A DNA stretch of 64,000 bases from positions 32,984,001 to 33,048,000 of the forward strand of contig NW_025964001.1 in NCBI RefSeq assembly GCF_023055435.1, written 5' to 3'. The translations under genes and the position numbers were made by a program. Positions 22,521 through 64,000 of the stretch are shown here, one piece after another. The notes under the pieces are model-generated. The model had not been told where the DNA came from, searched no databases, and worked only from the letters and a program-made list of their open reading frames with translations. Origin of the DNA: Haliotis rufescens (taxonomy: Eukaryota). Position 1 is the first letter of the stretch, and every line of letters begins with the position of its first letter.

Positions 22521-22573
<53 letters not shown>

Positions 22574-22610
22574 AATTAACAAAAAACAAAATAAACCAAA
22601 CAAATGCCCA

Positions 22611-22708
22611 GGGCCCCGTCCCACAAAGCGATCTTAGCGCTGAGATGATCATAACTCCCGTACTTTAACATAGGCTTACGCCCTACGGTCGCTTTGTGGA
22701 ACGGGGCC
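22611..22708. mobile_element. PIF/Harbinger-like MITE, next to a poly(C)-poly(A) tract at 22499-22570
   Basis: GGGCCCCGTCCCACAAAGCGATC ... GGTCGCTTTGTGGAACGGGGCCC. Confidence 0.7.
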
Positions 22709-27110: not shown

Positions 27111-28130
27111 ACTGTGTATATTTATGTATTAATTTTAATTCCTCTATGGGAATGAACACAAGAGAAGATATAGTTTTATTGATAACAATATTAATGCTGG
27201 TCATCAAAACTTCAAATAAGCCAGTTTGTTTTACTTCCTTGCGTGGATGGCATACAATTCACAAACTTAAGGTTTGAATACAAATAACAGACTAGGATAC
27301 AAATAAGAGTTCACATCTCAATATGTTCATATCATATGTACATCAGGATGCTTCCTGTCAACAATGGTTTGAAATGTTACAGTACACATCTGATGTTTCA
27401 AAAACATTGCATCTTCATCAAATATCCCCGTGTCAGTTCGAACCCTCTATTTCCTCACCATTGGTAGATCGATATTTGTGTAACGTATATAAGGTGGGTG
27501 AGGAAAACTGAAACCTCAATGACACCGAATCCCACACTGGAGTGACACAGAGCAGGGACAGGAATGAATATAGTCAACCGAATAATGCCGAATATCTTTT
27601 TATAAAAGCGCTACGTTCTCAGATGTGAACTACAAGATCATATCGTGACACATGAATCGTTAAAAAGGTTAAATGTATTAAATGTAAGAACAAAATGTTC
27701 ACGAAAGATTTCATTCTCCGAGATGCCAAGTATAAAGTGTGATAGATGATAGTTTTTACACTGAAGGCTTAGACACAAACCATATGTATGTAGCCAAGCT
27801 ATGATGTAGATTACATAACCACATTCAACATCTTGAACTCCACATGTACAACATTACAGAAATGAAACACCGAAACATTAAGAGGACTATAACGTACAGT
27901 AAGTGATTAGGTTTACTTACATATGTTGACACTAGTTGCATATACACAGTGCATGTAGCAGACAAGCAGCCTCGCGGTCCACATGTCTCCGGACTGTGTG
28001 TCATGCATCTACTCGTGGTGGTGAACCCAACAGGGAAGTAGAACGCAGATTCGGAAAACAGAGCGGAAAACCTACTGTATCCCAGATCCTGTTGATGTAT
28101 GTTTTGTACTATCTGTTGGTCTGTTCAAAT

Positions 28131-34149: not shown

Positions 34150-35110
34150 TATAGAAATGCAGGGTCCAAGAAGCAGCGAACGTTGGAAGTCATGCCTACA
34201 CTTACTGAAGCTGCGCGAAAAAAATTATCATTTAGAGGTAGTCCACGGGTGACCATGACCACCAATGAATGCTTCATGCGCTAACCTCACCTGTGTAGCC
34301 ACCTCTTAACGCCCCCTGTATCACTTCTGTAGTCCAAGGTTTTCGCAGAATTTCCGAGCACACCGTCAGGAATCGTTTGGTTAAGGGGGTGGGGGTAGGG
34401 GTGTCGGTATTAGCAGGTATTAGAGCCCTAAGTACAGTACGTGGCCTTGTTCTGTCACCACATTCAACTTCGTCTTTAATGGTGCCAAAATCATAATGGA
34501 TGGCCTCAACAGTTATTAATCAATATTTCTCCTACGACTTCCAGATGGCATAACACGGGTATACAAGCGACATTGATGAACGTTTGGCGCCAAACTGTTT
34601 TCAGATTTGGAGGTGGCAAATTTAATGTGTTGTGTTCTCGCACTGTAAGAACAGACCTTGTGTACGTCACAGGCATATTTACAGCCGTTCGTAACTGCAG
34701 CGAGATCCTTTGGCCAAACTCGTACTTCATTCCATTCCTGAACCAACGTGACGTCATTGTCAACACAACACGTATTTCCATTCACGGACGATTTCCGAGC
34801 AAACAACAATATTCTAGTTCTTCAGTGCTCATCCAGATCAACAGATCTGAACCAAATTGAATATGTATTGGATGAATCTGATAGGCGTGTTTCACGACGT
34901 AACATACATTGCAGGACTTGTTGTAGGCCTTGCAACTAGAGTGAAATAACATCCCCAGATAGTTCTTGGAGATTCTTGTTAATTCCATCGCTCGGCAGTG
35001 TCAGGCTATCATTAATTCCAGTGGTGGTCATACACAATATGGAAGTGCTCCGTCTTTGACCTTGCTCATTTCGTAATGTAACTGAATTCTTAAAACACTG
35101 AGAATAAAGA
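34150..35110 (+). mobile_element. Decayed Tc1-like element in intron 6 of paralogue B
   Basis: MPTLTEA, ERLAPNC..RFGGG and STDLNQIEYVLDESDRRV; collinear with 23917-25090. Confidence 0.7.
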
Positions 35111-38100: not shown

Positions 38101-38970
38101 AGAAGATGTTCTTATTTTAACTTGAAAAGCCATGTTTGATTGTTTGTTTTCATTCTGCCGATGTGTAGATCTTTGTTTCAAAATGTTTGTAAGCATGGTA
38201 TCATCACTATTTGATTGTGATTCACAAACACATGCCTATGAGATAGTCGGAGTCGTACAAAGGATTACTATAAGCGCTACTTAATATTATGGGAAATCAA
38301 TGGTTTTGTCTCTTTTATAACAAACAGATAGGGGATATTGTCACAGAAGAACGTTCATCAAGCCGAACACAAAGAAGGCACAGCATGACATTGGTGTAAA
38401 TTATCTATTTGAGATGACGCAAAGTCAGAAAATGTGTAAAATAGCTTGATAGCGTTAGGTGTAACGCTTTGTAGTGATTACAGTCTGTTGTCATATGTTG
38501 CACATTTACCTCAATTTACAATACCGGACGCAAGTCAAACAATCATATTAAACAACCATAAGGTTTTTTTCCCTCTAAACAGGATGTAGACATGCTCCTA
38601 AAACTGCCAATCATTGATATCTTTTGATCGGATATACGACGCTATATATTTAATCTGGTGTATCTATACATTTGTTGTAACTGTCTATTATTATAGAAAC
38701 ACGTTTAACAGCTTTTACTTTGTACATGATATGTTGCATTCCATTGAACGTGATCAAAATACGTTTGCACAATACAATACTTATCACGCATGGACCAAAT
38801 ATAACATTCGATCGACTGGTGTTTCATTACTAAATCAGACAAAAACGCACATCTAGAAAAAGTATATCGAATTATGTTAGGAGCCCATTAACTCTATGCA
38901 CAAATATCAGTCAGTTGTTTCAGTTGATTACAGTATGTTGTCATATGTTGCACATTTATCTCAATTCACA

Positions 38971-39240
38971 GTAGTGAGTGAGATGCGTTTAACGCCACTT
39001 TTAACAATATTAAAGTCATATCGCGGCGTGTCAGCTTAATGTGGGAGGAAAGCCCGAAGTGATGCAGGTCTCAGACGTTTATCAACTTCGATTAAACCGA
39101 AGCACGGATATGGTTCTGACAAAGCTAGAAGCATCGTCGGGGCGAACCGGGATTCGAACCCACAATCATAGGTTTCTGGCGTACCCAAGGGACGGAACTC
39201 TGCACAGCGAAACGTTTAGACGACTGGGCCACCCATGCCC
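38971..39240 (-). mobile_element. SINE family 2 copy
   Basis: Reverse complement of 2854-3133; TSD CTCAATTCA. Confidence 0.85.
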
Positions 39241-39759
39241 CTCAATTCAAAATACCGGGCACAAATCAACAAATCAAACAATAATATTAAACAAGCATAA
39301 GGGGTATTTATGTCCAAACAGGATGTAGACATGCACATAAAAATGCCAATCAATGATATCTTTTGAATTGATACATGACGCTATATACTGAATTTGGTGT
39401 ACATGTACATTTTTTTGTAACTGTCTATTATTATAGAAACACATTTTAACTGCTTTTACTTTGTACATTATTTGTTTTATGTCCATTGAAGCTGATCAAA
39501 ATCTTGCTAGGAACCCATTAATTCGTTTCAAATATATCAAATGAAGTTATTTCATTATTTGATTTATTTTAAAAAAAAAGTTATTGGAGCACAATCCTTT
39601 GAGTACAATCCTTTAGCACTAACCAGGTTCCTTGTATTGTTTGTATGGTAACATTTTCTGATATATTGGAGATAGAGCTTAGCTAATTTTACTGGATGTT
39701 ACCTGATTCGACATCAATATGTCATTCTGTGCTGACGTCAGTACATCTACGATGGCTGG

Positions 39760-40620
39760 TCAATACGTTCTAAGCCTGACTAACTTTCAACTATGGGTCA
39801 TTAAAAAAGTGAACTAGTCAATGTACTACATTGTTGGAGTAGTTCATTGCAAGAGTGTTTGGTCTGTTGAGGCCTGTAGTATATTAGTGACAGCCCGAAA
39901 TGGAAAAGAACGAGTACCGAGCAGTCATCGAGGTATTGACTTTAGAGAAAAATACTTCCCCAAACATTCATGACCGCATGTCACAAGTGAATGGGTATAA
40001 GAGCCAAAGCTATTCAACTTTTAAAGCAGCTATTAGGACACTATTTGACAGCTATGTATAAGGCTTGATGAACAAGTCTTGATGATGACTCTTGGTCTGG
40101 ACCTCCCTCAACTTCCATCCATGAAGATTCAATCTAGCGATAGAAACACTATAATGTCACGTAGACGTATTACCATTGATGAACTCGGGGAAGACACAGG
40201 TCTAAGCCATGGATTGAATGATACTATTATTCATAAATATTTACAGATGAATAAGATATCTGCTCGTTGGGTGACAAAGTTTCTAAATTCTGATCTTAAG
40301 AAAAAAGAACTGGCATTGCCAGAGACATCTTAGAGATAAGTGAGGATGATTTCATCAAATTAAGAAAGAGATAAGTAACGGGTGATGAAACATGGGTCTA
40401 CCAGTTTGATCCCTAGTCAAAACGTCAATCCATGGTTCCACTTCTCCGGCCTACTATGCTGATTTGCTTCATCGCTTGAGAGATTCTATCAAATAAAAAC
40501 AGCGAGGAAAGGGGTTCTACTACTTCATAACAATGCCTCTTCTCACACCTCTCGACATGTAAAGGCTGCTGTGCGACAATGTGGGTTCGAAGAGCTTCCT
40601 CACCCCCAATATTTCTTATA
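39760..40620 (+). mobile_element. Decayed mariner-type transposon in intron 1 of paralogue B
   Basis: MEKNEYRAVIE...IHDRM, MNKISARWV and VTGDETWVYQFDP; absent at the equivalent site of copy C. Confidence 0.75.
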
Positions 40621-41383
40621 TGAGATATCAATATAACGTACAGCCTCTTTAAGGATGTAAGCAAAAAGTACACGCTTTAATCATATCTTCCCGTATTTAA
40701 ATAATGATGACTCCCCGAATAGAATCAGACCGCGGCAATGTCGGACAAGTCCATTTCATGCACATGAGGGTTATATTGGTCTTTCGAAAATATTCTCACA
40801 ATTGTTGCGTCGATTACTGTAATTTTGCTCCTAATACCGATTGATATATCTATCTCACTTTTGGATGTTATCGTTCGGTCAATGCGTTTATCTGCGTTGC
40901 CCTGTTACATCTATGGGGAACACCTCACTAGACACTTCCCTCTAAAAAATAACGTTGTCCTATATACTGACGTCATAAAATATGTTTGAATCTCCAGAAA
41001 TGACGTCCTGATAGAACAATATGCTTCGTTCTTCATTGTTCTTTGCGAATATTCATTATTCATCAATATCTCATATTTCATTTAGACATTAAAATGACTT
41101 TAAAGGACATCATTTGAAAAACGTTTACTTACATATGTTGACACTAGTTGCATATACACAGTGCAGGCAACAGACAAGCAGCCTCGCCGTCCACATATCT
41201 CCGGCCTGTGTGCATATACCTCTACTCGCTGTGGTTTACCCAACAGGGAAGAAGAACGCTCACAACGGTTCGAAAGAAGTGATTATTGTAACGCATAATC
41301 TGTGAAAGACTTTTTTTTTCGATGAATTGCAATATCATAGTATCGAATTTTCCTAATGCGATTACATATACCATGAGCTAAAT

Positions 41384-48461: not shown

Positions 48462-48590
48462 TTTCGCTCGTCAAGCCGAAGACCCGGGTTCGATTCCCGA
48501 CATGGGTACAATGTGTGAAGCCCATTTCCGGTGTCCCCCGCCGTGACATTGCTGGAATATTGCTAAAAGCGGCGTACAACCATACTCACT
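48462..48590 (+). mobile_element. 5'-truncated SINE family 1 between ~90-bp direct repeats
   Basis: SINE body; 48370-48458 is repeated at 48605-48693. Confidence 0.8.
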
Positions 48591-49058: not shown

Positions 49059-49776
49059 TCATGTGTTATACTCATCAGTGGCCTTACATGTGGTCTCATA
49101 CGTATGGTTGTAGGTGTCATCCAACCTGATCACATCAGGCCCAGCACTAGCGACATCATAGTCACCTTCTTCAAACACCTTGTCTATCGCGCCAATGTGA
49201 CTGTACGAGTCATTTACTTTTCTGGCGTTCTCCCCTTGCTGTGGGGTGTCGTAGTTTCCCTCTGCAGCTTCCGTGGGGTCATACAAACCAGCATCACTTT
49301 TATCCCCTCCCGTGGAGCTGCACTTCTCGAAGGTGTGGTACTGAACACCCTCGTCGGAGTTGGCTACACCAGAACCTCCTGCAGATTTGTCCAGTCCAGT
49401 GTCCCTTCCATCTCCGCTTCTGTACTGTAGAATACATTCTGCTGTGTCGTAGTCGGGTCCGGAGAGATGCATGTAGGGCTTTCCTCCTGGCATGTCGGTG
49501 TGTTGTTTACTGGGCGTTGAGAGAGAATTGGACACCTTCTCAACATCAGTCTCAGGATGGTTCACGTAGAATTTCTCAGTGTGAGCATTGGGGTTTACTG
49601 TCGCCGTTGGAACAGGGGGAGTGAAAGGCTTCCCGTCAATTGTGTCTGGGGTTATAACAGAATATGCGCCATTGTCTCTCGGAACATCGAGACCGTCGTA
49701 GATCGTGTTTTCTGTTGGCGGGTTGAAGTTCACCTGTTGATTCGTATCTCTTCTATCCAAATGGAGTTTGCGTTGT
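49059..49776 (-). CDS. Exon 10: cytoplasmic tail with ITAM and multiple pTyr motifs
   Basis: Acceptor TTTCAG|A, phase 2; 14 Tyr; ends at TGA. Confidence 0.85.
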
Positions 49777-52700
49777 CTGAAACAACATTTGAAACATGAT
49801 TGAATGTGATGTACAAACATGCCCTTAATAATAAGTTCAAATAAGTTATGCTTACTTTATTGTTAATATTTAGCACAGTAAGTGGTTAATAAGTTCAGTT
49901 GTTCTTTTTAAGTGGTATACGCAAAGTAATCATTGGAATAACTTTGAAGGAAAATGGCCCCACTGGTCATCTCGGTCGGATTTGAGAGGAATCCATATTT
50001 AATAAGTTCACGTGACTGTCATATCACTGGCGGCAGTCGTGACCATTATATAAATGCTTCTCGATATCAACTTGTATAGTATGGTATACTAAGGAATTAT
50101 GCTATATTACTACTCCATTGCGTCCCGATGTATCATGACTAGTGGATCGAAATGTGTCGGGGCTTGTATCCCGTCCTCAACACTGACAAAACTGTCATGC
50201 TACTCATTTATAGGTCATATGGATTTGGCGAAAACACATGTTTGTGAATGGATGCACTAGTGTTGAATGTGGTTGCTTCAATGTTTGCCCGATATGTGCG
50301 TGTAACATATCATTTTCACACAGAAATATACAGCATTGCTCAATACCAGTAGAGAAAGCTTAAGATCAATTACTAATGTGTAAACCATCCTGTTGAAATA
50401 TAAGAAAAGTGATACATGTAGAAATTGTCTTATTTCACAAAACAGTTGCTTCAAAGATTTAAATAAACATCACATTAATTTAACAAAATAACAAGTTACA
50501 TGTCAAGAATGGTATCTGATAAATGAATTCATTCTTCAGATTCTGGTTTCTTTTCGCTATTTAAAGAAGTGCTGCCAGGAACCTCACCTTTGCAGAAGAA
50601 ATACAAGAGTCACGACTACCAGGAAGAAAACCACACATCCTGCAGCCAGCCCTATGCTTACACCTGGACAAAAAGGAAGTGTTAGATGTCAAAAGCTTGA
50701 TAAATATGTTAAACGTACATACTAGTTTACACAAGAAATATTGGGCATGTCCAGTAAGTATGTATACTATACTGAAGTAAACGATCACTATTGAATGCAC
50801 ACCGAAAACTGCTACCTTCATAGAAGTACACAATATATAATAATATGTCATGCAATCATGACAAGGGGCCTGTTACAAACAGAGCTAAGATGATTGTACT
50901 TTTGATATTTTAGCATAAACTAACAACAGTTGTGGAGCTAAATGCCCATTTCTGGTGTTCCCCGCCTGATAAAACTGTAATATTGCTATAATCTGCGCAA
51001 ACTCATACTCATTCACTAAGTCGCATTGTGGAATATTGAGTACTACTATATACAAACAATTAATTTTCAATATTGTAAGGAATAGAGATACGTGAAACTG
51101 AATTCTCTATCGCTTTCACATGGACTGTTGATAATACTGTAATTGGTAATTGTGATGATAGATGAGGTTTTACACCACTTTTAATAATATTTAAAAGTGA
51201 GGAATCGAACCCTGCTCTTTAGTGTAGCGAGCGAGCGTTTTTATGACAGGGTTACCTCTGCAGTGACCACTTACCCTTCTGAATATCAAGAGCTGACGGA
51301 CTGTCTGTGGTGGGATGAGAGGGATCAGCCCTGGAAACTGTTGATAAAGATGACGTTGCTAGTTTAGATATGATGGAACGGGTGATATAACAAGTGAAAA
51401 AGTCTCCNNNNNNNNNNNNNNNNNNNNNNNNNNNNNNNNNNNNNNNNNNNNNNNNNNNNNNNNNNNNNNNNNNNNNNNNNNNNNNNNNNNNNNNNNNNNN
51501 NNNNNNNNNNNNNNNNNNNNNNNNNNNNNNNNNNNNNNNNNNNNNNNNNNNNNNNNNNNNNNNCGGGCGGTAGTAAGATCTGAGGAAGAAAGGAACACAT
51601 TCCTTCATTAATAAGAAAAAGGACGATGTTGTTTTGCATTTTAGTATCATCTTATAACATTATCTGAGCGATGTATACGAGTGAATTAAAGAGAATCCAC
51701 TCCTCTTTACCATTGTGTAAAACAACATATTCGTCTGACGTGCTTAGTACCTTCACAAACAGAGGCAAGGCGAAAATGGCAGGGTAGCCAGTATGGTTTC
51801 CAGACGCCATCTTTTTTCAAAGCTTGGCATGTCGATATTTGTGAAACAACGAACGGAAGGAAGATGTAATCCTCATTTCCATTGGCCTCTTGTCCTGGAA
51901 ACATACAATTATCCACTGACTGTACAATGCAACCAGCGGTATTAATTATTCTAATTGATAAGGTTATGTTAATAGTTGTACATACTTACGTAAATAGATG
52001 AATGTATTTGGTTCTATGCTGTTGCTGTCTAGTTATTTGTAGTAATCAACTGCTAACTTATTAATTCAAACAAATCAAAGACCAATTTCCCGCTGTAAAC
52101 GTTTTTTACAATTTAGTGAGTGGCTGAGTATGTTTTTACGCCGCTTTTAGCAATATTCCAGCAATATCACGGCGGGGACATCAGAAATGGGCTTCACACT
52201 TCGTACCCATGTCGGGAATCGAACCCGGGTATTCGGCATGACGAGCGAACGCTTTAACTACAAGGCTACCCGACCGACCCTTTTTACAATTTAAACTGAC
52301 AGGTTAGCACAAAATAATAAAACGCACCATCGACGTATTTCCTTGAGACTTTCAATACAAGCCCAATCCAAAAGTAATCAGTTGGTCCTTTAATATTTTG
52401 GATCTCTCTTGCAGTGGAATCGTTGAGTCTGATCAAATCATTTGAGTAATGAGCATGTGTCCATGTCTGTCTTTCCGCTGATGAGGACACGCACACGCCC
52501 CCACTACAGTTTGCCTGGGGAGTATCTACAAACACATGAAATACGACGTCCGGTAACGTCTTTTTAGTTGTACATTTAGAAAGTAGCGGATGGTAACACA
52601 AGATGACAGAGTAAAACGCAATATATGGGATTTTATAAGTTCGTATTTTAGTAAAATCGTTGTGATGATATGCTTATAAGATAGGCCATGACAATACAAG

Positions 52701-55700
52701 ATGTTTATGCTTAGTGCATTGTGTTGTACTTGTCGTGGGCTGCATGAAGGAAATTTCAGTCTATTCAGATATGTCAACGTTTGAAATGCATCTTCAAAGC
52801 AGTTTCATCTGCTTTTTAGCATTTTATATAATTTACTTAATACATGTTTTCTGCGCTCTCCATGCGCGTGACAGTTACGATCTTGGGGTGACATCAGCGT
52901 TTTAGTTTAGTTTATTCTGAAGTATTAAAGTTTACATTTGTTGACTTCGCATTGGTCATGCGTGTCCTGGGTAAATCATTTCAGACTGTAGGAAACGCCG
53001 ATTGTGTCACAGAGTGATGTGAGATAACATAGGTCATACTTACTGTGGGAATAATATGCAAATCTTCGCTTATAATCTATACAAGCGTAGTAATAGTCTA
53101 GTTCTATTGAAACTGTATTATTCATTTTCACTCCATAAGCACATCGGCCATCCTTCGAGGGTTTAAATCCAACGTTTCCTACAAAGAGGTGAAAATGACG
53201 TAAAGTCACACAAACATACACAAGTTATTTATGACACAGCATAATTTACATACAATTATCAGGTACATTACCTATACTTGTAAAACCTTGAATGAAATGA
53301 ATTGTTCGGTTTATGACAATTATAATATGACTATTATGTTCACAACGTAGAGCAGCCGAAAGTAAGGCTTCAGGATAACAGCGTGATCTTGATGATTAGC
53401 TTGTCACAATATCAACGTGAACTTCGAAGATAACACAAGATGATATGTTGCCAATGAGTACAAGCTTTTAACAAGCTTATCCGATATTTTATATAGTATA
53501 AGTGTAGGGACGCACATACCAGTACCACGTGTATAGACTGACATCCCAGCGTCGTCGCCACATATTTCATCTGGGTTGCCCGGACACTGCATCCATCTTG
53601 CACTCGTCTTTGTGACGTTGTACGAATTTCCGAGACAATAACACTTTTCCCCCTACAAAAAAACAAAACAACAAACACATAATGACTTTGTGTACTCCTG
53701 TCATAGTCAACCAGGGCACGGCATCCCACCTGCTGCACTGGTATTTGTGAGGTGAGGTGGAATGGGGTTTAACGTCGCGTCCAAGATTATTGCACTTATA
53801 TAGCGACGTGCATGCACGTGTATCTATATGTGAGGCTGCTTGTACTAGTCCGGACTAATGCCGATTTATAGTGCTAGCTCACTGAGATACCATGCCGCAA
53901 CATGAATACCCCACTCAGACACAGTATACTGACTCCGAGCCGACCAGTCCTTGTTTTAGCCCCTTAATGCCGAGCGCCAGACAGGGTAACAACAAGTACC
54001 ATCTTTTAACGTCTTTTGGTATGACGCGGCCGGGGATCGAACCCCGGACCTTCCGCTCTCCGGGCGGACGCTCTACCACTAGACCACGAAGGCGGTCCAC
54101 TGGTATTAGTATATGCTTACTTTTTCCAAGACAATAACACTCCTCCCCTTCCCACAACAAACCACAAAATATGTTGTATACTCCTGTCATAAAAAGAGTA
54201 TTTTCCTAACATGACTAATGATATGAACTAAAGCGGTTCTTACATTATCATGGTGTGCTTGTACAACATCAGTCACATTCAGAAATAGAATCCCTACCTC
54301 CCTCATGCTTTCTGTATGTGTTGTTTGGGGTTTTCAAAACAGAAGCCAATGTAAATATGTGATAGAATTCTTTTAACCACCCTTTCAGACACAAAAGGTT
54401 TTACTGTCCTACGTTCAGGCCTATTGTGCGGGTGGTTATAAACTAGTATCCAAAAGAAACGATACCAACTTATTTTCAAAATTGTTTTTTACTAAGTGAA
54501 TTGTCTAGTATGAAAACATGCCAATTCGTATTGCACATCCCAAACACAGCATAGTCGATAAAAAATACCGGGAACACGTGATCACTTCCGGGAAAAAACG
54601 TAAATTTCGTGAAAGTGACATTTCCCTCTCTAGCATGTTATGCACGTGCATAAAAACTGTATAAATCGGCTGATCAGACACGTTGATATCACAGCAACAA
54701 AAAGAACACAAGATATGCCACGTTTGACAGCCATCGAGAGAGAGAGAGCCGTTGGAATGGTCCAACAAGGAGCGTCACACGTCGACGTCGCCAGAAGGTT
54801 GGGCTGCGCACGCATCACTATCACCAGGTTGATGCAGCGGTTACGTTAGACAGGTCAGACGTCAGACAGGCCCAGGAGTGGAAGACCACGAGTAACCACG
54901 CCCCGTGAACATCGTTACATCCGGGTAATACACCTAAGGAACCGCACCGTAACAGCGACGTCCACGGCGGCTAAAGCACTGGGACACAGGATCAGTCGAC
55001 AGACCGTCTACAGGAGACTACGGCAGTATGGTATCCGGCCACGTCATCCCTACCGCGGACCGCTCCTGACGCCTCGACACCGGAACAACAGACTGACTGG
55101 GCCAGGCGAGTTCGACGTTGGCAACGGCGGGACTGGGCACGTGTTATGTTCTCTGATGAGAGCAGATTCCTCATCTTCAGAAACGATGGACGGCAGCTTG
55201 TATACCGACGATTTGGTGAACGTTTGGCGCCTAACTGTATCCAACAGGTCCGGCCGTTTGGAGGTGGAGGGTTAATGGTTTGGGGTGGCATATGTGATGA
55301 CGTCAAAACGATGCTCGTCGTAATTCGTGGAAACCTGAATGCACAGCGTTATCTTGATGACATCCTACGGCCTGTTGTGGTGCCCTTTATTCAGCAACAG
55401 CCTCGTGGACTCCTTTTCCAACATGACAATGCAAGGCCACACACAGCAAGATTGACACAGAACTTCCTTGCCAACGCCAACGTACAGGTTTTGCCATGGC
55501 CCGCATGTTCACCGGACATGAATCCCATCGAGCACTTATGGGACCACCTCGATCGGCAAATCCGACGTCGCCGTGTGCCTCCAGTCAACGTCCAGGACTT
55601 GGAACGATGTCTCCTCGAGGAATGGCAACGCATCACTCCCAACGTCATCAGTCCGTAGGCGTGTTCTGGCATGTATTGATGCTCACGGTGGACATACCCG

Positions 55701-58700
55701 CTACTGACTTGACTTTGAGACGTGTGGTGTGACATTTCCCGTTGTTTCTGTGAATAGTGCTCTAACGAAATGTTCATTTTTCGACCCCACCCATCTTTAA
55801 AGGCTTGTCATATTGGTTGTACAGATTTTATTGCAATGAAATTTTTGTACAGATGCTGTGAAAGGATTTCTCAAAAGCATAACACCAATCCTAAACTTCT
55901 GCATTGTTTAGTTTTTCTTTTATGTCGTTGCAAACAGGTGGTATCGTTTCTTTTGGACACTAGTTTACATTGAAGCAGACCCGAAAAAGTGAATTATAAA
56001 GCGACCCTGTTGTATTTCCTGTTGATGGTGTACTGTACACATCATAGTTGGAACGTTCAGAGAAAATAACACATTTCCCCTACAAAAAATAGTACATATA
56101 ACATGTTAGGAAACATAAACCTTTATGGATAACAACTTCTGGTTTTTGTTTGGATTTAGCGACGTTTCGATGTAGATTCTTCCACCGTTATCAAGCTGGA
56201 GTGGAGGAAGGTGTAAGAATCTACATCGAAACGTTACTTACTGGAATAAACAGACGTTGTTATCCATAAAGTTGTATACTTTCTTATTTACTCATCAACT
56301 GTGTGAAGCCAATTTCTGTGATATTGCTTGAATATTGCTAAATGTGACGTAAATCCATACTCACTAACTAACTCTAGAATGCCAATCAAACATATAACAT
56401 GTTGTGTACTTCTGTCATAAGAAAACCTTGATATGAATATGAAGAGGATCTTTTATTATCCTGGTGTGCTTGTACAACATCAATTACATTAACAAATAGC
56501 ATCTCTCGCTCTCGTGTGTCGTTTGTGGATTTTCAAAACAGAAGAAAATGTACCAACGTGATCTATTCTTTATACCACTTTGGGATCAATAGTGTTTGTG
56601 ACAAAAAACCTCTTACGCTCAGGCCCACTGTGCGGTTGGTTTTACAATGAAGTTGACATCCGTAAACAGAGTTACTGGACACATTGTTTGGGCTCGTTGT
56701 GGGTGATGCACTGTACCCATCATAGTTGTAGAGTGGGGTACCATCTTCTGTAATATCATACATTAGAGGCTTCAGTAACAGATAAACTTCAAGTACAATT
56801 AATGCATAGACAACGCCAGGATGATACATATATATAATATCTATTTATCTTTGGGAACTACATGTACATCTACATGTCATATCATGCACAAGAGGCATCC
56901 ATAACAGATTAACTATACATACAGATAAATGCGTACACAACGTCGCTTATATATATCATTAATTTATATATTATCTATTGAGATGTGGGAACTACTTCTA
57001 CAGACTCACCTGTCCATATCCATGTTGAATACCTCATGGCTCCTACCCAGTAGGAAGTGTTGTTGTGTAGAGAGTTTTCCATGACTGGAGGGAGGAATTC
57101 TGTGTCAGAAATATACAGATCTCTCTTCAACGCCATCTTACAGTTTTTCCGAGCATCCCACCAGTTGTTTTCCTCCTCGTTTATAAAGATGTGTTTTGTC
57201 TCCGTGGCTGCAAATGATTTAGTAACATATTTTTAAATTATTTGTACTGTTTGTATATACATATGTGACGTAGTCAAGACATCTGCTTTCAGATATGCAA
57301 GTTTGCTGACGATCACCACTTTAAAGGGTGATACATCAAATCTGTTGAAATAACCAAAGGCAATATTGCGTGAAGAAATCTTTAATGAATCAAAGTCCGT
57401 CGTCATTTGCCACACAATGACAGCAAAAGAGATGTGACCAATTATCAGTCAGGTCACCTGTCAAAATAATAATATCTTACCAAAAACGAAACGTCAAAAA
57501 ATCATGAAAACAAATTCATTGTAAAAAAAAACCCACTAAGTAGCGCATATGAGATCTACGTGGTGCGATCACCGTCATCTAATGCCCCCAATAAGTGCCA
57601 TGATGGTTGCCAAGGGGTTCTTGTTCCACTCTTCATTATTACCATTGCCGAGTTCCTGTAGAGATGCCGGAGGGAAAGGGCGTTGTGAGAGGGCGATCTG
57701 CAGCTCTTTCCATATATGTTCGATAGGGTTGAGGTCTGGTGACCGTTGATGCTCTGAGTAGGCATCAACGATCCTGGCACGATGAGATCGTGCGTTATCG
57801 TCCATAAGGAAAACCTCGGTCCAATAGCAGCAGCATATCGTCTCACGTACACATCTAGAAATAAAGCGACAAAACCCTTTCCATAAAGTCATCCCTGTAA
57901 CGCCCGCCTGTCACCATGCTCCGCTGTTCTTCCAGCCCTACTGATCCCATCCCATGATTTACCCCTCCACACACACACTTCCATAGTGGTTACGTTCGGC
58001 TACGTTGGAATCCTGTTTTTCACAAACTCGGGCAAGGCGATCTGTGAAGTCCAGATAGTATCTCGATTCATCAGTGACAAATACTGGAGCTCAATCCTGG
58101 TCTGTTCAGTTGACGTGATGACCAGCCTATGTTGGGTCAGTGGGATGTGAATGTATGCCCTCAGTGACCGGGCATCAGCCTAAGGGAGACGATTACGCAC
58201 TGTCTTAGTAGAAACGTTAACGTCATTGGCCTTCCTCGGGTAATTTCTGATTGTGGTTGCAGTCACGACGTGATGACGTCTTGCTGCAATCAGGAGAAAC
58301 TTGTCTGCCCGCTGTGTGAAGGAACGCTGTTGAACACCTTCATGTCGCTGGCTAAGCGTATCCAAACGTCTGACACGTCGCTATATAAGTGCAATAATCT
58401 TGTGCTGGAGGTTAAAGCCCATTTCACCTCCATGCCCCGCCGATCACAATGTGGCTGACACCGAAGACATTTGCAACGTAACGTTGTGTTGACCCGGTTT
58501 CAAGCATGCCTATGCATCTACATAATCCTTCGGTCGTCAAACGACGATTTGATGCTAAGAGGGGATCAGTGCATTTCATTGTTGAAATCCACAGTAGCAA
58601 ATGCGGTTGTGCTCTCTGATGATGATGCGCAACGATTCTGTCACGATACATCCAATCACAGGTTTTCAAGCACCTCGTGCACATGCATCGTGCTCATGAC

Positions 58701-61700
58701 TGCATGCCTCTATCCGTTCACTATGAAATTGAGTTCCTGTAGGAACATTGGATATGTCAAACTTTATTGATAATGAATGATATTTTTATTTCATTAAAAT
58801 TTGATCCTTGGCAAATTATAAGAAGTACACATCTATGCGTGCGTGTGTGTATGTGCAGGCGCATGGGTTCAGCTAAGATACAAGTTTTGGCGTTCATAAC
58901 TAAGAAGGCAGATGTAAAACCCAATTGATGATAAGAGGGTTATTTTGATTATTACCTCTGTCAAAATCGTGTCACTATTCGTCGGCCGTAAGAGAGACGT
59001 ACCCCTTTGCCATTACGATAAGTCCACTCGGGTGTAAAATACCATCTTTTACGAACAACATATTCACTTACATTTTCTTTATGAGACCGATGAGCAAATA
59101 GTCCTTTGTATAAAGTAATCGCAAATGATAAAAATAAAGAAGTTTGTATGATTCTGTTTGACTAAACATTTTAAATGAACAAATAAAACACCCAAACTGA
59201 TATTATATTAGTGAAACTAAACCTAATGACAATCGTCAAGCATTCATGGCCGTTTAACGTGCTTTTTTTACGCGAACATTTTAAAGTGATTCACAATTAT
59301 ATACATGGTTATGGTCGGAATCATACAATCGACTCTGCTTTGGGCAGAAAATTCTTTTGTATATGGAAAGGGTTTTGTCGCTATTAGTTTGCCACAGATT
59401 ACAGGCTTGTTGTTAGACATGCCCGAGCCTAATTAATATCCACTTGGATATGCCAATCTCGATCTTTTCACCTGTGCGAAAAAGGAAAACTCATTCCACG
59501 GTCAGGTAAATCATCGTCTAATTGGAGGAGTTAAACTTGAAAAACCATGTTTGATTGTTTGTTCTCATTCTGCCGATGTATAGAACATTGTTTCAAAATT
59601 GTTTGTAAGCATAGTATCATCACTATTTGATTGTGATTCACAAACACATGCCTATGAGATAGTCGGAGTCGTACCATGGATTAATATAAGCGCAGATTAC
59701 TTATTATTATGGGACGCAGATTACTTATTATTATGGGAATGGTTTCATCTCTTTTATAACATAAGGGGATATTGTCACAGAAGAACGTTCATCAAGCCGA
59801 ACATAGGGGGGTGGGGGGTGGGGGGTGGGTGGGGTGTCGACAAGAAGTTTATATGTCATCAAAGGAAACACAAAGATGGGAGAGCATGACATTGGTGTAA
59901 ATGTTCTATTTGAGATGAGGCAAAGTCAGAAAATGTGTAAAACAGCTTGATAACGCTAGGTGTAACGCTTTGTGGTGATTACAGACTGTTGTCATATCTT
60001 ACACATTTACCTCATTTCACAATACCGGACACAAATCAAACAATCATATAAAACAACCATAAGGGGTATTTACGTCCAGGCAGGGTGTAGACATGCTCAT
60101 AAAACTGCCAATCATTGATATCTTTTGATCGGATATACGACGCTATATATTTAACCTGGTGGTTATATACATTTGTTGTAACTATCTATTATTATAAAAA
60201 ACACGTTTAACTGTTTTTACTTTGTACATTATATGTTGCTGTCCATTGAACGTGACCAAAATACGTTTGCACAATACAATACTTTTTACGCATGGATAAA
60301 AATATAACATTCGATCGACTGGTGTTTAATTACTAAATCAGAAAATAACGCATATCTAGAAAAAGTATATCGAATTATGTTAGGAGCCCATTACCTCTAT
60401 GCACAAATATCAAAGTCAGTTGTTTCAGTATTTGTTGTCATATAAAAATGATTTATTTAAAATAAGGATGTATTTGAACAAAGGTGATACCGTGGAACAC
60501 AATACTGTAGCACAAACCCAGTTCCTGGTATTGTTTGATACATTTGGATAACATTTTCTGATACATTAGAAATGAAGCTCAGCTTACATTTCACTTGATG
60601 TCACCTGATTTGACATTATTATACCATTCTGTGTTGACGTCAGTACGTCTATGTTCACTTTATATATGCTAACGTTTTCATATGTCATTTTATTCTCATT
60701 TTCACCGAACTAAAAATATAGCCCTATGTATCAATTCTATAGCGATACATGATTGGGAGTTTTATGAGAACATCAACGTCCTGATTCGATAACTTCCTTA
60801 TGCCAGTTTAATTTTTGTCCGGGATTGAAAAATGAGGTTAATCTGTGACATATAACAATATTCCGTACTTATAGCAAATCAATGCACCAAATAAACGTTG
60901 GTATTACCTTTTCGAAACTTAAACATAATGTCAATATATTAACAGTTTGTGCTACTTCCTTGTGTCGATCGCACAGAATCCCCAAAGTACACTCAAAATC
61001 TTAATAGACATATGCAGAACATACATTTAGCTAGACAGGGTATATCATAAACTGAATAATTGTTATTTACTTAATCACACATTGTTCCTGTACGAGACTT
61101 TACATAAACCTACCCCAATTATATACTGATGAAATACAAAAAATGTGCACATCACAATATATCATTATCAATTTTATCGCTGTAGTATATGTAGTCAGTA
61201 AATAGCTGATGTCGTTATCGTCTGAAAGAATGCAGGACACCGTGTCAATTTACAGATAATTCCTTATTTCCTACCATCCGTGTATTGAAATAAGTGTTAT
61301 CTTACGTGAATGAAGAAAAGAGATACGTTAAAGACACTGAATTTCAACTGACATATCCAAAGACACACTGGGGCGAAACAGTGCGGGATAAATTGAAAGA
61401 ATGTAGTCAACCATACAATGCCCAAAATTTAACATAAAAACACAATGTTCACATATGTGAACTACAATACCATATCGTGACACAAAGATCGTCATAAAAA
61501 TTGAATGTATAAAGAAAATCTTAAAGAATGATGTCATACACCGAGATGCTGTTTCTTGACCAATTTTAACTATTGCAGTCACATATTTCGTTATATACTT
61601 GCGGGAATACTGCATGTAATTCCACGCGATAATAGTATCAAAACTAAAGGCCCAGACATGTCCGAGATATTTCTGGCTTTAAACCATATGTATTAAGTTG

Positions 61701-61836
61701 TGATATAAACCACATTAAACGTAAAGACATTAAAATGACTTAAAAGGACATCATGTGAACACGTTTACTTACATATGTTGACACTAGTTGCATATACACA
61801 GTGCAGGTAGCAGACAAGCAGCCTCGCGGTCCACAT
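49059..61836 (-). CDS. Intact 10-exon type-I membrane receptor (paralogue C), 626 aa: SP - CTL/WSC/CTL ectodomain - stalk - TM - Tyr-rich ITAM tail
   Basis: join(61836-61773, 57207-57010, 56747-56617, 53652-53520, 53178-53044, 52525-52328, 51894-51751, 51358-51275, 50663-50588, 49776-49059) = 1881 nt. All introns GT-AG, phases 1,1,0,1,1,1,1,1,2 compatible, no internal stops. Exon bounds 1-9 are conserved in the paralogues. Confidence 0.8.
50588..50663 (-). CDS. Exon 9: transmembrane helix
   Basis: GVSIGLAAGCVVFFLVVVTLVFLLQR, followed by basic QRK; TCCAG| ... |GTGAGG. Confidence 0.85.
51275..51358 (-). CDS. Exon 8: Ser/Thr/Pro-rich stalk
   Basis: ATSSLSTVSRADPSHPTTDSPSALDIQK; TAG| ... |GTAAGT. 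Confidence 0.75.
51408..51563. other. Assembly gap (156 N) in intron 7 of paralogue C
   Basis: Direct reading. Confidence 1.
51751..51894 (-). CDS. Exon 7: CTL-like domain C-half
   Basis: GQEANGNEDYIFLPFVVSQISTCQALKKDGVWKPYWLPCHFRLASVCE (C..W..C......CE pattern). Confidence 0.85.
52116..52280 (-). mobile_element. SINE family 1, full length
   Basis: 13-bp TSD TTTTTACAATTTA. Confidence 0.9.
52328..52525 (-). CDS. Exon 6: second CTL-like domain N-half
   Basis: NCSGGVC...QTWTHA...YFWIGLVLKVSRKYVDG (WIGL and W/YxDG motifs). Confidence 0.85.
53044..53178 (-). CDS. Exon 5: CTL-like C-half
   Basis: GNVGFKPSKDGRCAYGVKMNNTVSIELDYYYACIDYKRRFAYYSH. Confidence 0.8.
53520..53652 (-). CDS. Exon 4: WSC domain C-half
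   Basis: GEKCYCLGNSYNVTKTSARWMQCPGNPDEICGDDAGMSVYTRG (WSC CxC...CPG...CG....SVY). Confidence 0.9.
53746..54097 (-). mobile_element. tRNA-derived SINE family 4 (Meta-domain-like), full length
   Basis: A-box TGGTCTAGTGG, B-box GGTTCGATCCC, central GTCATACCAAAAGAC...GGCGCTCGGCATTAAGGG, 10-bp TSD CACTGGTATT. Confidence 0.85.
54441..55965 (+). mobile_element. Near full-length Tc1 (DD34E) transposon with an inactivated transposase
   Basis: TA TSDs and ~27-bp TIRs AACTAGTRTCCAAAAGAAACGATACCA. ORF from 54715 (MPRL..HTH) with TAG at 54847 and a frameshift near 55095. FSDESRF, QHDNARPH and SPDMNPIE with 34-residue D-E spacing. Confidence 0.95.
56158..56197 (-). ncRNA. Putative minimal type-I hammerhead ribozyme in an inverted Penelope-like terminal repeat (56121-56271)
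   Basis: AGC-UUGAUAA-C-GGUG..CAUC-GAAA-CG-UC-GCU: U3:A8 core variant, 3-bp stem I, palindromic ACGU stem III. Confidence 0.45.
56617..56747 (-). CDS. Exon 3: WSC domain N-half
   Basis: EDGTPLYNYDGYSASPTTSPNNVSSNSVYGCQLHCKTNRTVGLS. Confidence 0.85.
57010..57207 (-). CDS. Exon 2: first CTL-like domain N-half
   Basis: STETKHIFINEEENNWWDARKNCK...TSYWVGAMRYSTWIWT. Confidence 0.9.
57570..58830 (-). mobile_element. Decayed Tc1-like element (C-specific), with a SINE family 4 tail at ~58372-58432
   Basis: MLETGSTQRYVANVFGVS, TDESRY, FLMDDNARSHR and SPDLNPIEHIW. Confidence 0.8.
61773..61836 (-). CDS. Exon 1: signal peptide
   Basis: MWTARLLVCYLHCVYATSVNI|GTAAGT; 64-nt exon conserved in all three paralogues. 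Confidence 0.8.
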
Positions 61837-64000
61837 ATCTCCGGCCTGTGTGTCATGCATCTACTCGTGGTGGTGTATCCAACAGGGAAGAAGAACGCTC
61901 ACAACGGTTCGAAAGAAGGGATTATTATATTGGCAAAACCCGTGAAAGACGTCTTTGTTCGATGAATTGCAAAATCATAGCACCGAGTTTTCCCTATACG
62001 ATAACATATACGATGAGCTAAATTTAGTTACGAGGGTTGATTGATAAGATTTGAGCCTCACGAAGAATTGAGTAAGAGTGAAATCTTTCCTTGAGGACAT
62101 TACATGTCATAGAGGCATATTCACAGTACACGCGTCCTTTGAGCAATATGTTTCGCTGTGACAAGTCAGTAAAATAAGGAGGGTCTGTTGAACAAAAGCC
62201 TTTCTGGATCAGCTTCAAACAGAGATAGATTAGCACGAGACACGTTGTGCTTGGTGCGTTTTTGATCAGATGTCAGAAGCTTTGGAACCCAACGATTTGA
62301 TACTTTCTTCATTGCCAGAGTTTCTGTGAGATACTCTGTCCTGGGAAATGATTACTGAACGAGCAATACGACGCCCAGATTTAAACTTTGCGGCCCACCT
62401 CTTTACAGTTGTATAGAAAGTAGCATCCATTCCTTCGTACATACCTCAGCTCAATATTGCATGCTTTCCAACAGAGGAAGAGACTATCCTCCCCATTACT
62501 TAGTTCCTTTCCTTCAACAGTTAAGCGAATCTTCATAACCTAAACTTCGTTTCTGTGTCTTCACTTTGCATGTCTTTATGACGGGTGCCACATGTGGGGC
62601 AAGATACGCTCACCTTTTCGCGAACACCTGATATCATCACTATTTGATAGTCATTGCTTAACATAAGCAAATGATATGCTCAGAGTCGTACATTACTAAA
62701 TTCGTAGCCTGCAACGGCGTTGTACATACTCTACGGACAACGAGTTCCAGTTTGGCTTGTAATGTTCCATCTTGAGGTCACAAAGAGCATCTGCTGAAAA
62801 TGGCAACACAGTCATGGCTGATGAAAAAATGAGTTATAAGCGTGAAACTTGTCATTACACATACATGCTGTCGACAATGTTTGATGGGCAGTCAATCGGG
62901 TGCTCTAAAGGATATATACGGTTCGTTTTTGTTCATCTTATTTGAAATCCCGGTTAAAATCACGCTCAAAATGTCTGACGCTGCAAATCATTCTCGCTGC
63001 ACGGTCAGCGATCTAGTTTATCGAAAAAGCTAAATAGCTTATCGTAAAGGTAACGTGCGACCTTATTTTCTGTGTTTAATGATCATTAAACATAATCCAC
63101 ATGAACGCAAAACATTTCGTTATTAACTATGTCAGCTGAGGGAAAATCGTCCAACTGTGCCCTTCATACTGTGGTCAGCCTGAACCATGTGAACTTACAC
63201 GTTCGTTCATTCGGCGAAAGAGATGATCAGCTGTATGTGCATATTTAAAATAAGATAAGTTAACTATTTTTTGCTAAAAAGCTTCAGCGTTTGATAATAC
63301 AATTACAAATCAACATTACATCTGGATGTTTTCCTTTGTTTGCAATAATCACGGTCCTAACGTTTGTTTATTGATTAACGACGCATTCAGCAATAATCCA
63401 GCTGTATAACGGCGGGTTGTAAATAATCTGGACCAGACAATCAAGTTATCTTTATCCGTAGAAATCATTTCCAACTGAAGAAGGAAAAGAACAAACTTAA
63501 AGAAATAATTAGTAGCATATTACACCTATCAAGAGAAACAGGTCAGTGTTCAAAAACAAATATGCGTCTTGTTTATTTCCAAATGACTGAATGTATACTC
63601 TATATTAACCATGAATATGTTGCATTGCTGTGTTGAGGGTCTCCTTGAGAAGGACATTCGGGTTATATTTAAGTTATCGATTTGCGAAGTGACTTAAGTT
63701 TAATTAACTATTATATTATGCTTATTTAGTAGTCATGATCACCAGCCTAGACAAGCATGTAGGGGGCACGTGTGTCTTTGGTGCCACTATTCGGTGTGCA
63801 GAGCGGCGACCCTTTGGCACACCAGAAACCTATAATTGTGGGTTCGTATTCTGGTTTCTCCCCAATTGTGTTTCCAGGTTTGCCAGCACCATGCTCGTGC
63901 TCCTGGATTCCAAAGTTGTAACCTGCAATACCTCCTGACAAGCAGTGATATAACTGTAATACTGTTAAAAACGGTATTTAACCCAACTAACTCACTCACT

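What the first reader, a model, noticed from the sequence alone, without database searches (positions are those of the whole stretch)
49653..49700. Canonical membrane-proximal ITAM: ENTI-YDGL-x8-YSVI
YxxL-x8-YxxI with an upstream acidic residue, about 26 aa after the TM, matches the ITAM consensus YxxL/I-x6-8-YxxL/I that docks tandem-SH2 kinases (Syk/Shark). The TM has no charged residue, consistent with adaptor-independent signalling (inference).
Basis: partly seen in the sequence, partly recalled or inferred. Interest (0 to 1): 0.8.

Follow-up and report, generated by a model that had tools for sequence, protein, structure and literature searches.

The report
ITAM-like tyrosine pair, abalone lectin receptor
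The motif is really there, in the inner tail of an expressed red-abalone lectin-type surface receptor, but only one small branch of an abalone-only gene family keeps it, and its spacing could be chance, so it is a plausible, untested signalling site and not a surprise.

Summary
Confirmed. Window 49700-49653 (minus strand) encodes YDGLDVPRDNGAYSVI, Tyr415-Ile430 of Haliotis rufescens LOC124120054. This is a 627-aa type I C-type-lectin/WSC receptor. The motif starts 27 residues after an uncharged membrane helix. Transcript-like contigs confirm the splicing.

The 238-aa tail has 14 tyrosines, no Pfam or PDB match, and relatives only in Haliotis (16 hits among 1.84 billion proteins). In 27 aligned tails the second tyrosine (YxVI) is kept in 23. 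The first is kept in 19, always as N-x-x-Y, but has Leu/Ile at +3 in only 7. The strict consensus occurs in 3 proteins. All six members of the gene's own branch (four species) keep both tyrosines and their spacing, with Leu>Phe in one and Ile>Val in two.

Residue shuffles give P about 0.01. Given the tail's four YxxL/I units, ITAM spacing arises by chance in 14-31%.

The genome encodes a Shark-type SH2-ankyrin-SH2-kinase and an SHP2-like gene; I did not locate a true Syk.

Best reading (0.4): a branch-specific ITAM-like docking site in a Draper-like multi-tyrosine tail. Main rival (0.3): separate NxxY and YxxΦ sorting signals.

The scan noted ITAM-like tails on other abalone receptor families elsewhere in this genome.

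The parts
49653..49700 (-). ITAM-consensus stretch YDGLDVPRDNGAYSVI (Tyr415-Ile430 of LOC124120054). The Tyr415 codon is 49700-49698 and the Tyr427 codon is 49664-49662.
   Evidence: Direct translation; identical in RefSeq protein P0031.
49701..49715 (-). T-E-N-T-I before Tyr415. This gives an N-x-x-Y context (Asn at -3) and Glu at -4.
   Evidence: Asn at -3 is present in 21 of 27 family tails and in all 19 that keep the Tyr.
49059..49776 (-). Terminal exon: the 238-aa acidic tail with 14 tyrosines, plus the stop codon.
   Evidence: ORF and acceptor site. Transcript-like contigs end exactly at 49776 (X1 record 1, X5 record 29). No Pfam or PDB match.
50588..50663 (-). Transmembrane exon, 76 nt: (G)VSIGLAAGCVVFFLVVVTLVFLLQ(R). 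No charged residue.
   Evidence: Matches P0031 residues 364-389.
51275..51337 (-). Stalk exon, 63 nt: SRADPSHPTTDSPSALDIQK.
   Evidence: AG/GT scan in the right phase. 63 + 76 = 139 nt, which equals the unlaid middle of contig X5 record 29. Present in P0031.
51751..51928 (-). Exon for the C-terminal half of the membrane-proximal C-type lectin-like domain (...WKPYWLPCHFRLASVCE). The donor GT is at 51750-51749. The upper boundary is approximate.
49059..61860 (-). Whole gene LOC124120054, about 10 exons: signal peptide, lectin-like/WSC/lectin-like ectodomain, stalk, membrane helix, tail. Further exons lie at about 61860-61774, 57229-57011, 56751-56617, 53664-53518, 53182-53042 and 52526-52326.
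   Evidence: tblastn of database proteins P0003 and P0031 on the window. Pfam on P0031: Lectin_C 25.1 bits (cut-off 22.6) and WSC 23.1 bits (below the 27.8 cut-off).

Best explanation
SHOWN. The 48 bases encode the two membrane-proximal tyrosines (Tyr415, Tyr427) of the cytoplasmic tail of Haliotis rufescens LOC124120054. This is an expressed, spliced type I receptor. Its ectodomain has a C-type-lectin-like domain, a WSC-like domain and a second C-type-lectin-like domain. It has an uncharged membrane helix and a 238-aa acidic tail with 14 tyrosines, about ten of them conserved across an abalone-restricted family.

INFERRED (about 0.4). In this gene's branch the pair works as an ITAM-like module inside a Draper-like multi-tyrosine tail:
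1. Ligand-driven clustering lets Src-family kinases phosphorylate Tyr415 (YDGL) and Tyr427 (YSVI).
2. The doubly phosphorylated pair docks the two SH2 domains of the abalone Shark-type kinase (SH2-ankyrin-SH2-kinase, contig C605) or of Syk.
3. The other conserved tyrosines (PYxHL, GDYDTA, QYNVL/QYHTF, VYDHV, YSHI, DYDVA) recruit further SH2 or PTB proteins.

The module looks like a branch-specific elaboration of two older signals, an NxxY and a YxxΦ. It is not a defining feature of the family.
For: - The consensus is present in a cytoplasmic position.
- Splicing is supported. Three transcript-like runs cover the exons only, and one contig joins 49776 to 51751 through 139 nt, which equals the TM exon plus the stalk exon.
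- In the gene's branch (P0031, P0003, P0002, P0018, P0033, P0023; four species) both Tyr and exactly 11 intervening residues are kept. Half of the intervening residues differ, and the whole tails are only 43% identical to the H. rubra and H. asinina members.
- The 16-residue window ranks 17th of 223 for conservation against those two members.
- Leu/Ile is enriched at +3 of the tail's tyrosines (P = 0.009).
- ITAM-consensus pairs occur in 9 of 32 family tails, against 0.6 expected from shuffles. Some look independently built on the same anchor Tyr: YCII-x8-YHHI in P0013/P0027 and YCGL-x10-YSVI in L015.
- The own genome encodes SH2 (37 bits), ankyrin repeats (33 and 30 bits), SH2 (22 bits) and a Tyr-kinase exon (68 bits) on one strand at C605:21382570-21406658.
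- Precedents: the Draper tail has an ITAM, an NPxY and 10 other Tyr (PMC6219719). Oyster CgIgR uses a classical ITAM with CgSyk (PMC6994640). Oyster transmembrane C-type lectins CgCLec-HTM and CgCLec-TM1 act with Syk (review PMC13027682).
Against: - Only 3 of 27 aligned tails are strict ITAMs, and Leu/Ile at +3 of the first Tyr occurs in 7 of 27.
- The closest paralogue (84% identical) has YDGF. The H. rubra and H. asinina branch members have YSVV.
- The 16-Mb cluster has YGLA. Several copies lack one Tyr.
- Given four YxxL/I units, ITAM spacing arises by chance in 14% (x6-8) to 31% (x6-12) of random placements.
- The acidic residue is at -4, not -3.
- dN/dS between the two neighbouring tails is only mildly below 1: 0.63 overall and 0.42 for the first 60 residues, on small counts.
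- No phosphorylation, binding or tissue data are available.
Confidence: 0.4

Rival explanations
1. The two tyrosines are independent sorting or adaptor signals, and the ITAM match is incidental. Tyr415 sits in an (E/D)N(T/A)(T/I)Y motif of the NxxY type, like FENTLY in the mannose receptor or NPxY in LDLR, CED-1 and Draper. That type drives clathrin uptake or PTB-adaptor docking. Tyr427 sits in a YxxΦ signal (YSVI) for the AP-2 μ2 subunit. On this reading the receptor is mainly an endocytic or phagocytic lectin.
For: - Asn at -3 is kept in 21 of 27 tails and in all 19 that keep the first Tyr. Leu/Ile at +3 is kept in only 7.
- Y-x-[VA]-I at the second site is kept in 23 of 27 and sits in the most conserved block of the tail, RDNGAYSVITPDTIDG.
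- Spacing between the two Tyr columns varies from 6 to 12 residues across the family.
- The ITAM spacing is not significant once the YxxL/I units are taken as given.
- FENTLY mediates clathrin-dependent uptake of another multi-lectin-domain receptor (PMC8551360).
Against: - There is no Pro at -2 and no aromatic residue at -5, so it is not a full FxNPxY motif.
- Within the gene's own branch, YDGL and the exact spacing are retained across four species.
- The many other acidic Tyr motifs argue for phosphotyrosine signalling, not only sorting.
Confidence: 0.3
2. The phosphorylated pair docks a different tandem-SH2 protein, above all the SHP2/corkscrew-type phosphatase. The module would then be modulatory or inhibitory rather than activating.
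For: - The own genome has an SHP2-like tandem-SH2 gene at C212:3.143-3.148 Mb.
- The second site has Val or Ile at +3 (YSVI, YSVV), as ITIM-type sites do.
- One paralogue lineage reads S-E-Y-C-V-I, a formal ITIM (L014).
Against: In the query the -2 residues are Thr (Tyr415) and Gly (Tyr427), so neither site fits (S/I/V/L)xYxx(I/V/L). No phosphatase-binding data exist.
Confidence: 0.1
3. The match is neutral. The tail is a fast-evolving, disordered, Tyr/Asp-rich region in a young, genus-restricted, tandemly duplicating family. This particular pair has no specific function.
For: - Frequent loss or change of either half among paralogues.
- dN/dS is about 0.6 overall and about 1.2 in the distal third.
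- The neighbouring copy in the window has lost its tail exon and has a broken TM exon.
- The chance level is 14-31% under the unit-preserving null.
Against: - The block around Tyr427 is the best-conserved part of the tail, and Tyr427 is kept in 23 of 27 tails.
- The gene is transcribed and spliced.
- About ten tyrosines are kept across tails that are otherwise about 30-40% identical.
Confidence: 0.15

Closest known systems
Drosophila Draper (CED-1/MEGF10 family) tail and its Shark kinase
   Same: Single-pass type I receptor that signals through its own tail. That tail holds an ITAM consensus (YxxI/L-x6-12-YxxI/L), an N-x-x-Y type motif and about ten further tyrosines (PMC6219719). A Shark-type SH2-ankyrin-SH2-kinase is encoded in this genome too.
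   Different: No sequence homology: there is no Pfam hit on the tail, and the profile search finds only Haliotis proteins. The ectodomain is lectin/WSC, not EGF repeats. The motif here is NTIY rather than NPxY. Nothing has been tested experimentally.
Oyster transmembrane C-type lectins CgCLec-HTM and CgCLec-TM1
   Same: Mollusc membrane C-type lectins whose cytoplasmic tyrosine motif associates with Syk and drives ERK and cytokine output (as summarised in review PMC13027682).
   Different: Those are described with a hemITAM or 'non-classical' ITAM. Here there is a full two-tyrosine consensus in a 238-aa multi-tyrosine tail, with a lectin-like-WSC-lectin-like ectodomain. The tail family is abalone-only. 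I did not compare the sequences directly, because the oyster proteins were not retrieved.
Oyster CgIgR
   Same: Mollusc receptor that carries a classical ITAM (D/ExxYxxL/I-x6-12-YxxL/I) in its own tail and binds CgSyk (PMC6994640).
   Different: Its ectodomain is an Ig domain. Its acidic residue lies at the classical position. Binding was shown experimentally there and not here.
Mammalian Dectin-1 and CLEC-2 hemITAM receptors
   Same: Lectin-fold receptors that signal to Syk without an adaptor chain (PMC3576117, PMC3634610).
   Different: They are type II proteins with an N-terminal tail holding a single YxxL preceded by a tri-acidic stretch. This protein is type I, has two tyrosines and has no tri-acidic stretch.
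Mannose receptor (MRC1) FENTLY internalisation motif
   Same: Type I multi-lectin-domain receptor. E-N-T-(L/I)-Y is shared almost letter for letter with T-E-N-T-I-Y here (PMC8551360).
   Different: The aromatic residue at -5 is missing here (Thr or Ala). The MRC1 tail is short and is not a multi-phosphotyrosine scaffold.

Membership tests
ITAM (immunoreceptor tyrosine-based activation motif) | Sequence YxxL/I-x6-8 (to 12)-YxxL/I | tested here: met
   YDGL-x8-YSVI at 49700-49653, minus strand.
ITAM (immunoreceptor tyrosine-based activation motif) | Lies in the cytoplasmic part of a membrane receptor or adaptor | tested here: met
   N-terminal signal-like peptide, a single hydrophobic helix at residues 365-387, and basic QRQRKLHLDRR after it. 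The topology is inferred from sequence.
ITAM (immunoreceptor tyrosine-based activation motif) | Acidic residue at the classical position (D/E-x-x-Y) | tested here: not met
   The sequence is T-E-N-T-I-Y, so Glu is at -4 and position -3 is Asn. This feature is absent from many accepted ITAMs.
ITAM (immunoreceptor tyrosine-based activation motif) | Both Tyr, their +3 Leu/Ile and the spacing conserved in relatives | tested here: inconclusive
   Own branch: the Tyr pair and the spacing are kept in 6 of 6, but only 3 of 6 are strict (YDGF in one, YSVV in two). Whole family: 3 of 27 strict, +3 Leu/Ile in 7 of 27, second Tyr in 23 of 27.
ITAM (immunoreceptor tyrosine-based activation motif) | A tandem-SH2 kinase (Syk/ZAP-70/Shark) is available in the organism | tested here: met
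   SH2-Ank-SH2-Tyr kinase exons on one strand at C605:21382570-21406658. True Syk was not located. Syk is reported for abalone transcripts (PMC8428104) and for invertebrates in general (PMC10253181).
ITAM (immunoreceptor tyrosine-based activation motif) | Dual Tyr phosphorylation and phospho-dependent binding of the tandem SH2 | not testable with these tools
   Needs phosphopeptide binding and cell assays.
hemITAM (Dectin-1/CLEC-2 type) | Single YxxL preceded by a tri-acidic stretch in the N-terminal tail of a type II lectin | tested here: not met
   Type I topology, two tyrosines and no tri-acidic stretch (TENTIY). The definition is taken from PMC3576117.
ITIM | (S/I/V/L)-x-Y-x-x-(I/V/L) | tested here: not met
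   The -2 residues are Thr (Tyr415) and Gly (Tyr427). Only one paralogue lineage (SEYCVI, L014) fits.
NPxY / FxNxxY internalisation or PTB-docking motif | Asn at -3 of the Tyr; Pro at -2 and an aromatic residue at -5 in the full motif | tested here: inconclusive
   Asn at -3 is present and conserved (21 of 27). Pro at -2 and the aromatic at -5 are absent.
YxxΦ (AP-2 μ2) sorting signal | Tyr with a bulky hydrophobic residue at +3 in a cytoplasmic tail, some distance from the membrane | tested here: met
   YSVI lies 39 residues from the helix, and the YxxΦ form is kept in 23 of 27 tails. Binding was not tested.

The most novel reading that the evidence does not exclude
In this abalone-only receptor family an ITAM is being 'born' repeatedly from older sorting signals. 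Around one conserved anchor tyrosine (YxVI), ITAM-consensus pairs have arisen at least three times with different partners: an upstream YDGL/YDQL, an upstream YCGL, and a downstream YHHI. Neighbouring copies carry broken halves (YDGF, YGLA, Tyr-less) or no tail at all. The tandem arrays would then work as natural activating and non-activating paired lectin receptors wired to Shark or Syk.
Probability: 0.15. Interest if true: 0.6.

Novelty: new member of a known kind. Interest (0 to 1): 0.35.

Why it matters
If the pair really docks Shark or Syk, abalones would have a genus-specific, tandemly expanding set of lectin receptors that signal through their own tails without an adaptor chain. That would add a gastropod case to the oyster (CgIgR, CgCLec-HTM) and fly (Draper) examples of ITAM signalling outside vertebrates. 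The family also offers natural variants (L418F, I430V, a one-residue deletion, Tyr losses) that amount to a ready-made mutational series. As it stands, it is a plausible annotation for an 'uncharacterized protein', not a surprising finding.

Tried and rejected
- Tail homology. Pfam on the tail gave no family. A PDB sequence search gave no match at E <= 1.
- Tail paralogues inside the window. There are none. tblastn finds only the query exon. The neighbouring copy lacks the tail exon.
- Hunt for Syk. I examined tandem or kinase-linked SH2 loci from the Pfam SH2 and kinase scans of the own genome. They turned out to be:
  - SHP2-like (C212);
  - two CSK-like genes (C1:61.697-61.707 Mb);
  - two PLC-gamma-like genes (C79);
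  - p85-like (C112:48.43-48.45 Mb);
  - Tec-like (C446);
  - Fer-like (C46).
  These names rest on my reading of the exon translations against remembered family sequences, not on a database test.
- Shark-type locus. The C605 locus is Shark-type by domain order. Its kinase exon alone matched EGFR and JAK chains best, and its first SH2 matched Nck, Syk and ZAP-70 about equally. Those two searches therefore did not decide anything.
- Closest paralogue of the Shark kinase exon. It lies at C35:14831153-14831323 at 53% identity and may be Syk. No paralogue of the Shark SH2 exon was found.
- Limit reached. The stretch C605:21393100-21406199 and the C35 locus could not be read.
- hemITAM and ITIM readings: rejected on sequence.
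- Joined model. I built, typed and searched no joined spliced model of my own. Exons were handled one by one. The only full-length sequences used were database proteins returned by the search tools (P0031 and others).
- Other limits. The N run at 51408-51563 was left as it is.

Full report
**1. What is there**

The window is eukaryotic: about 40% GC, with split genes. The finding lies on the minus strand. The codons from 49700 down to 49653 read YDGLDVPRDNGAYSVI, preceded by TENTI. The coordinates are exact.

The stretch sits in a terminal exon, 49776..49059, which has a ttcag acceptor. The exon encodes 238 residues: 27 Asp, 14 Glu, 14 Tyr.

The exon before it, 50663..50588, encodes (G)VSIGLAAGCVVFFLVVVTLVFLLQ(R). 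It has a gtgagg donor and a matching phase. A 63-nt Ser/Thr/Pro-rich stalk exon (51337..51275) precedes that.

**2. Gene and organism**

The word search returned P0031 = XP_046338729.1, 'uncharacterized protein LOC124120054 [Haliotis rufescens]', 627 aa. It is identical to my exon-by-exon reading. In it the helix is residues 365-387 and the tyrosines are 415 and 427.

The gene is therefore annotated, not hidden, but it has no function assigned. Own-genome loci are identical to other H. rufescens RefSeq proteins. The window is therefore red abalone: a 1.33-Gb assembly, contig C223, near 33.03 Mb.

Pfam on P0031 finds Lectin_C (25.1 bits, above the cut-off) and WSC (23.1 bits, below the cut-off). 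About ten exons map between 61860 and 49059.

I made no joined model of my own. Exons were searched separately, and only database proteins were used whole.

**3. Expression**

Three runs of the same species label, from two studies, cover the tail exon and upstream exons. They have zero depth in the intron 49788-50575. A DNA-like run covers the intron as well.

One contig ends its match at 49776 and resumes at 51751 after 139 letters. That equals 76 + 63 nt, the TM exon plus the stalk exon. This shows a spliced transcript that joins the tail to the membrane helix. It says nothing about tissue or expression level.

**4. Chance**

- Shuffling the tail's residues gives the x6-8 consensus in 0.9% of trials and the x6-12 form in 2%.
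- The tail holds four YxxL/I units: YDGL, YSVI, YMHL and YSHI.
- If those units are kept and placed at random, two of them fall at x6-8 spacing in 14% of trials and at x6-12 in 31%.
- The real oddity is the excess of Leu/Ile at +3 of tyrosines (P = 0.009), that is, a tail rich in SH2- or AP-type tyrosine motifs. The ITAM spacing itself is not unusual.

**5. Relatives**

The tail has no Pfam family and no PDB relative.

In the own genome there are about 14 related tail exons:
- a neighbour 18 kb away (84% identical);
- two or three degraded copies nearby;
- a cluster of seven or more copies at 16.04-16.23 Mb on the same contig (39-46% identical).

A profile of these tails (A1), searched against 1.84 billion representative proteins, gave only 16 hits. 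All are from Haliotis rufescens, H. cracherodii, H. rubra or H. asinina. The tail family is abalone-restricted as far as HMMER can see.

**6. Conservation of the motif**

Of 27 aligned tails:
- The second Tyr is kept in 23, always as Y-x-x-Φ (mostly YSVI).
- The first Tyr is kept in 19, and all 19 have Asn at -3: (E/D)N(T/A)TY.
- Leu/Ile at +3 of the first Tyr occurs in only 7.

Motif state by group:

| State | Members |
|---|---|
| Strict YDGL-x8-YSVI | the query, and H. cracherodii P0003 and P0018 |
| YDGF-x8-YSVI | H. rufescens neighbour P0002/L002 |
| YDGL-x8-YSVV | H. rubra P0033, H. asinina P0012/P0023 |
| YDQL-x9-YT(V/A)I | P0035/P0010 |
| YGLA...YSVI (one-residue deletion moves Leu to +2) | 16-Mb cluster |
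| First Tyr lost | P0011/P0032, P0004/L011, P0009, L014, P0006 |
| Second Tyr lost | P0014/P0034 |
| Both lost | P0007 |

Within the query's own branch (six proteins, four species), both Tyr and exactly 11 intervening residues are kept. Four of the eight spacer residues change, and the tails as a whole are 43% identical to the H. rubra and H. asinina members.

The 16-residue window ranks 17th of 223 by conservation. The peak of conservation lies just downstream, at RDNGAYSVITPDTIDG.

About ten other tyrosines are also conserved: PYxHLSGPD, GDYDTA, EGQYNVL, AGVYDHV, EGxYDT, DxYSHI, EDAYDVA, DDTYxH.

ITAM-consensus pairs (x6-12) occur in 9 of 32 family tails, against 0.6 expected from shuffles. 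They include apparently independent ones built on the same anchor Tyr: YCII-x8-YHHI in P0013/P0027 and YCGL-x10-YSVI in L015. The tails are related, and the unit-preserving null is far less strict, so I take this as suggestive only.

dN/dS between the two neighbouring tails is 0.63 overall, 0.42 in the first 60 residues and about 1.2 in the distal third, on small counts.

**7. Possible partners**

Pfam SH2 and Tyr-kinase scans of the own genome, followed by reading of candidate loci, show one locus with the full domain order. On one strand at C605:21382570-21406658 lie an SH2 (37.4 bits), ankyrin repeats (32.8 and 30.5 bits), a second SH2 (22.1 bits) and a Tyr-kinase exon (67.6 bits). This is the Shark/HTK16 domain order.

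Other tandem-SH2 loci look like SHP2, PLC-gamma (two) and p85. CSK-like, Tec-like and Fer-like genes were also seen. These names come from my reading of the exon translations, not from a database test.

A true Syk was not located. The closest paralogue of the Shark kinase exon is at C35:14.83 Mb.

The literature says invertebrates have one Syk plus SHARK (PMC10253181). A SYK-annotated transcript is reported in abalone (PMC8428104).

**8. Reading**

Three points shape my reading:
- The family-level signal is a multi-tyrosine, acidic tail of the Draper kind: an ITAM, an NPxY and ten other Tyr (PMC6219719).
- The two tyrosines in question are conserved separately, as an NxxY and a YxxΦ. The first nearly repeats the mannose receptor's FENTLY uptake motif (PMC8551360).
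- Only in the query's branch do they add up to an ITAM consensus.

I put 0.4 on a working ITAM-like docking site for Shark or Syk in that branch. I put 0.3 on two independent sorting or adaptor signals, 0.1 on docking of an SHP2-type phosphatase, and 0.15 on no specific function.

Mollusc receptors that signal to Syk through their own tails are already described: CgIgR (PMC6994640) and CgCLec-HTM/TM1 (PMC13027682). At best this is a new member of a known kind, in a new abalone-only tail family.

Other notes of this scan report ITAM-like tails on other receptor families elsewhere in the same genome. I did not test those.

Noticed in passing
window 31907-41211 (minus strand); TM-exon homologue about 32341-32415: A second tandem copy of the receptor gene. 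Its DNA matches the query gene from 51399 down to 50159 at 83% identity, then the homology stops, so there is no tail exon. Its TM-exon homologue has a 1-bp deletion that brings a TGA into frame. It is either a pseudogene or a tail-less form.
   Followed up: partly
window 22009-28008 (minus strand): A third, more divergent copy of the lectin/WSC ectodomain exons (40-90% identical to P0003, varying by exon). No TM-like or tail exon was found in the 5 kb downstream.
   Followed up: partly
L002 (G000:C223:33051350-33052060, 18 kb beyond the query tail): The closest paralogue, LOC124120375, reads YDGF instead of YDGL. It ends at a TAG three codons before the query's stop. Its H. cracherodii counterpart P0018 keeps YDGL.
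   Followed up: yes
P0013 / P0027 (H. rufescens LOC124125500 and its H. cracherodii counterpart): The tail carries about seven tandem repeats of a unit of about 30 residues, GEDQYNVL...GVYHHVGPG. It also has a separate strict ITAM consensus, YCII-x8-YHHI, built on the family's conserved anchor Tyr.
   Followed up: partly
G000:C605:21382570-21406658 (L044, L046, L045): Shark/HTK16-type gene: SH2, ankyrin repeats, a second SH2, and a Tyr-kinase exon 13 kb further on. The middle of the gene could not be fetched.
   Followed up: partly
window 5480-6931 (+): A single 483-aa open frame that starts with a RING-like cysteine pattern (CTICYDVY...CLHTFCLKC...CPLC). It may be a TRIM/RING-type gene. It was not scanned.
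   Followed up: no
window 55146-55658 (+) and 57575-57892 (-): Open frames that look like Tc1/mariner transposase pieces (...HDNARPHTA..., ...DDNARSHRA...). They lie inside introns of the receptor gene.
   Followed up: no
window 52125-52300 and 53750-54100: Very high summed contig depth (10^4-10^6) and many loose ends in all four runs. These are short interspersed repeats in introns. The same element recurs near 48500-48590 and at several other places in the window.
   Followed up: no
window 51408-51563: A run of 156 N in the intron between the stalk exon and the lectin-domain exon. Left untouched.
   Followed up: no
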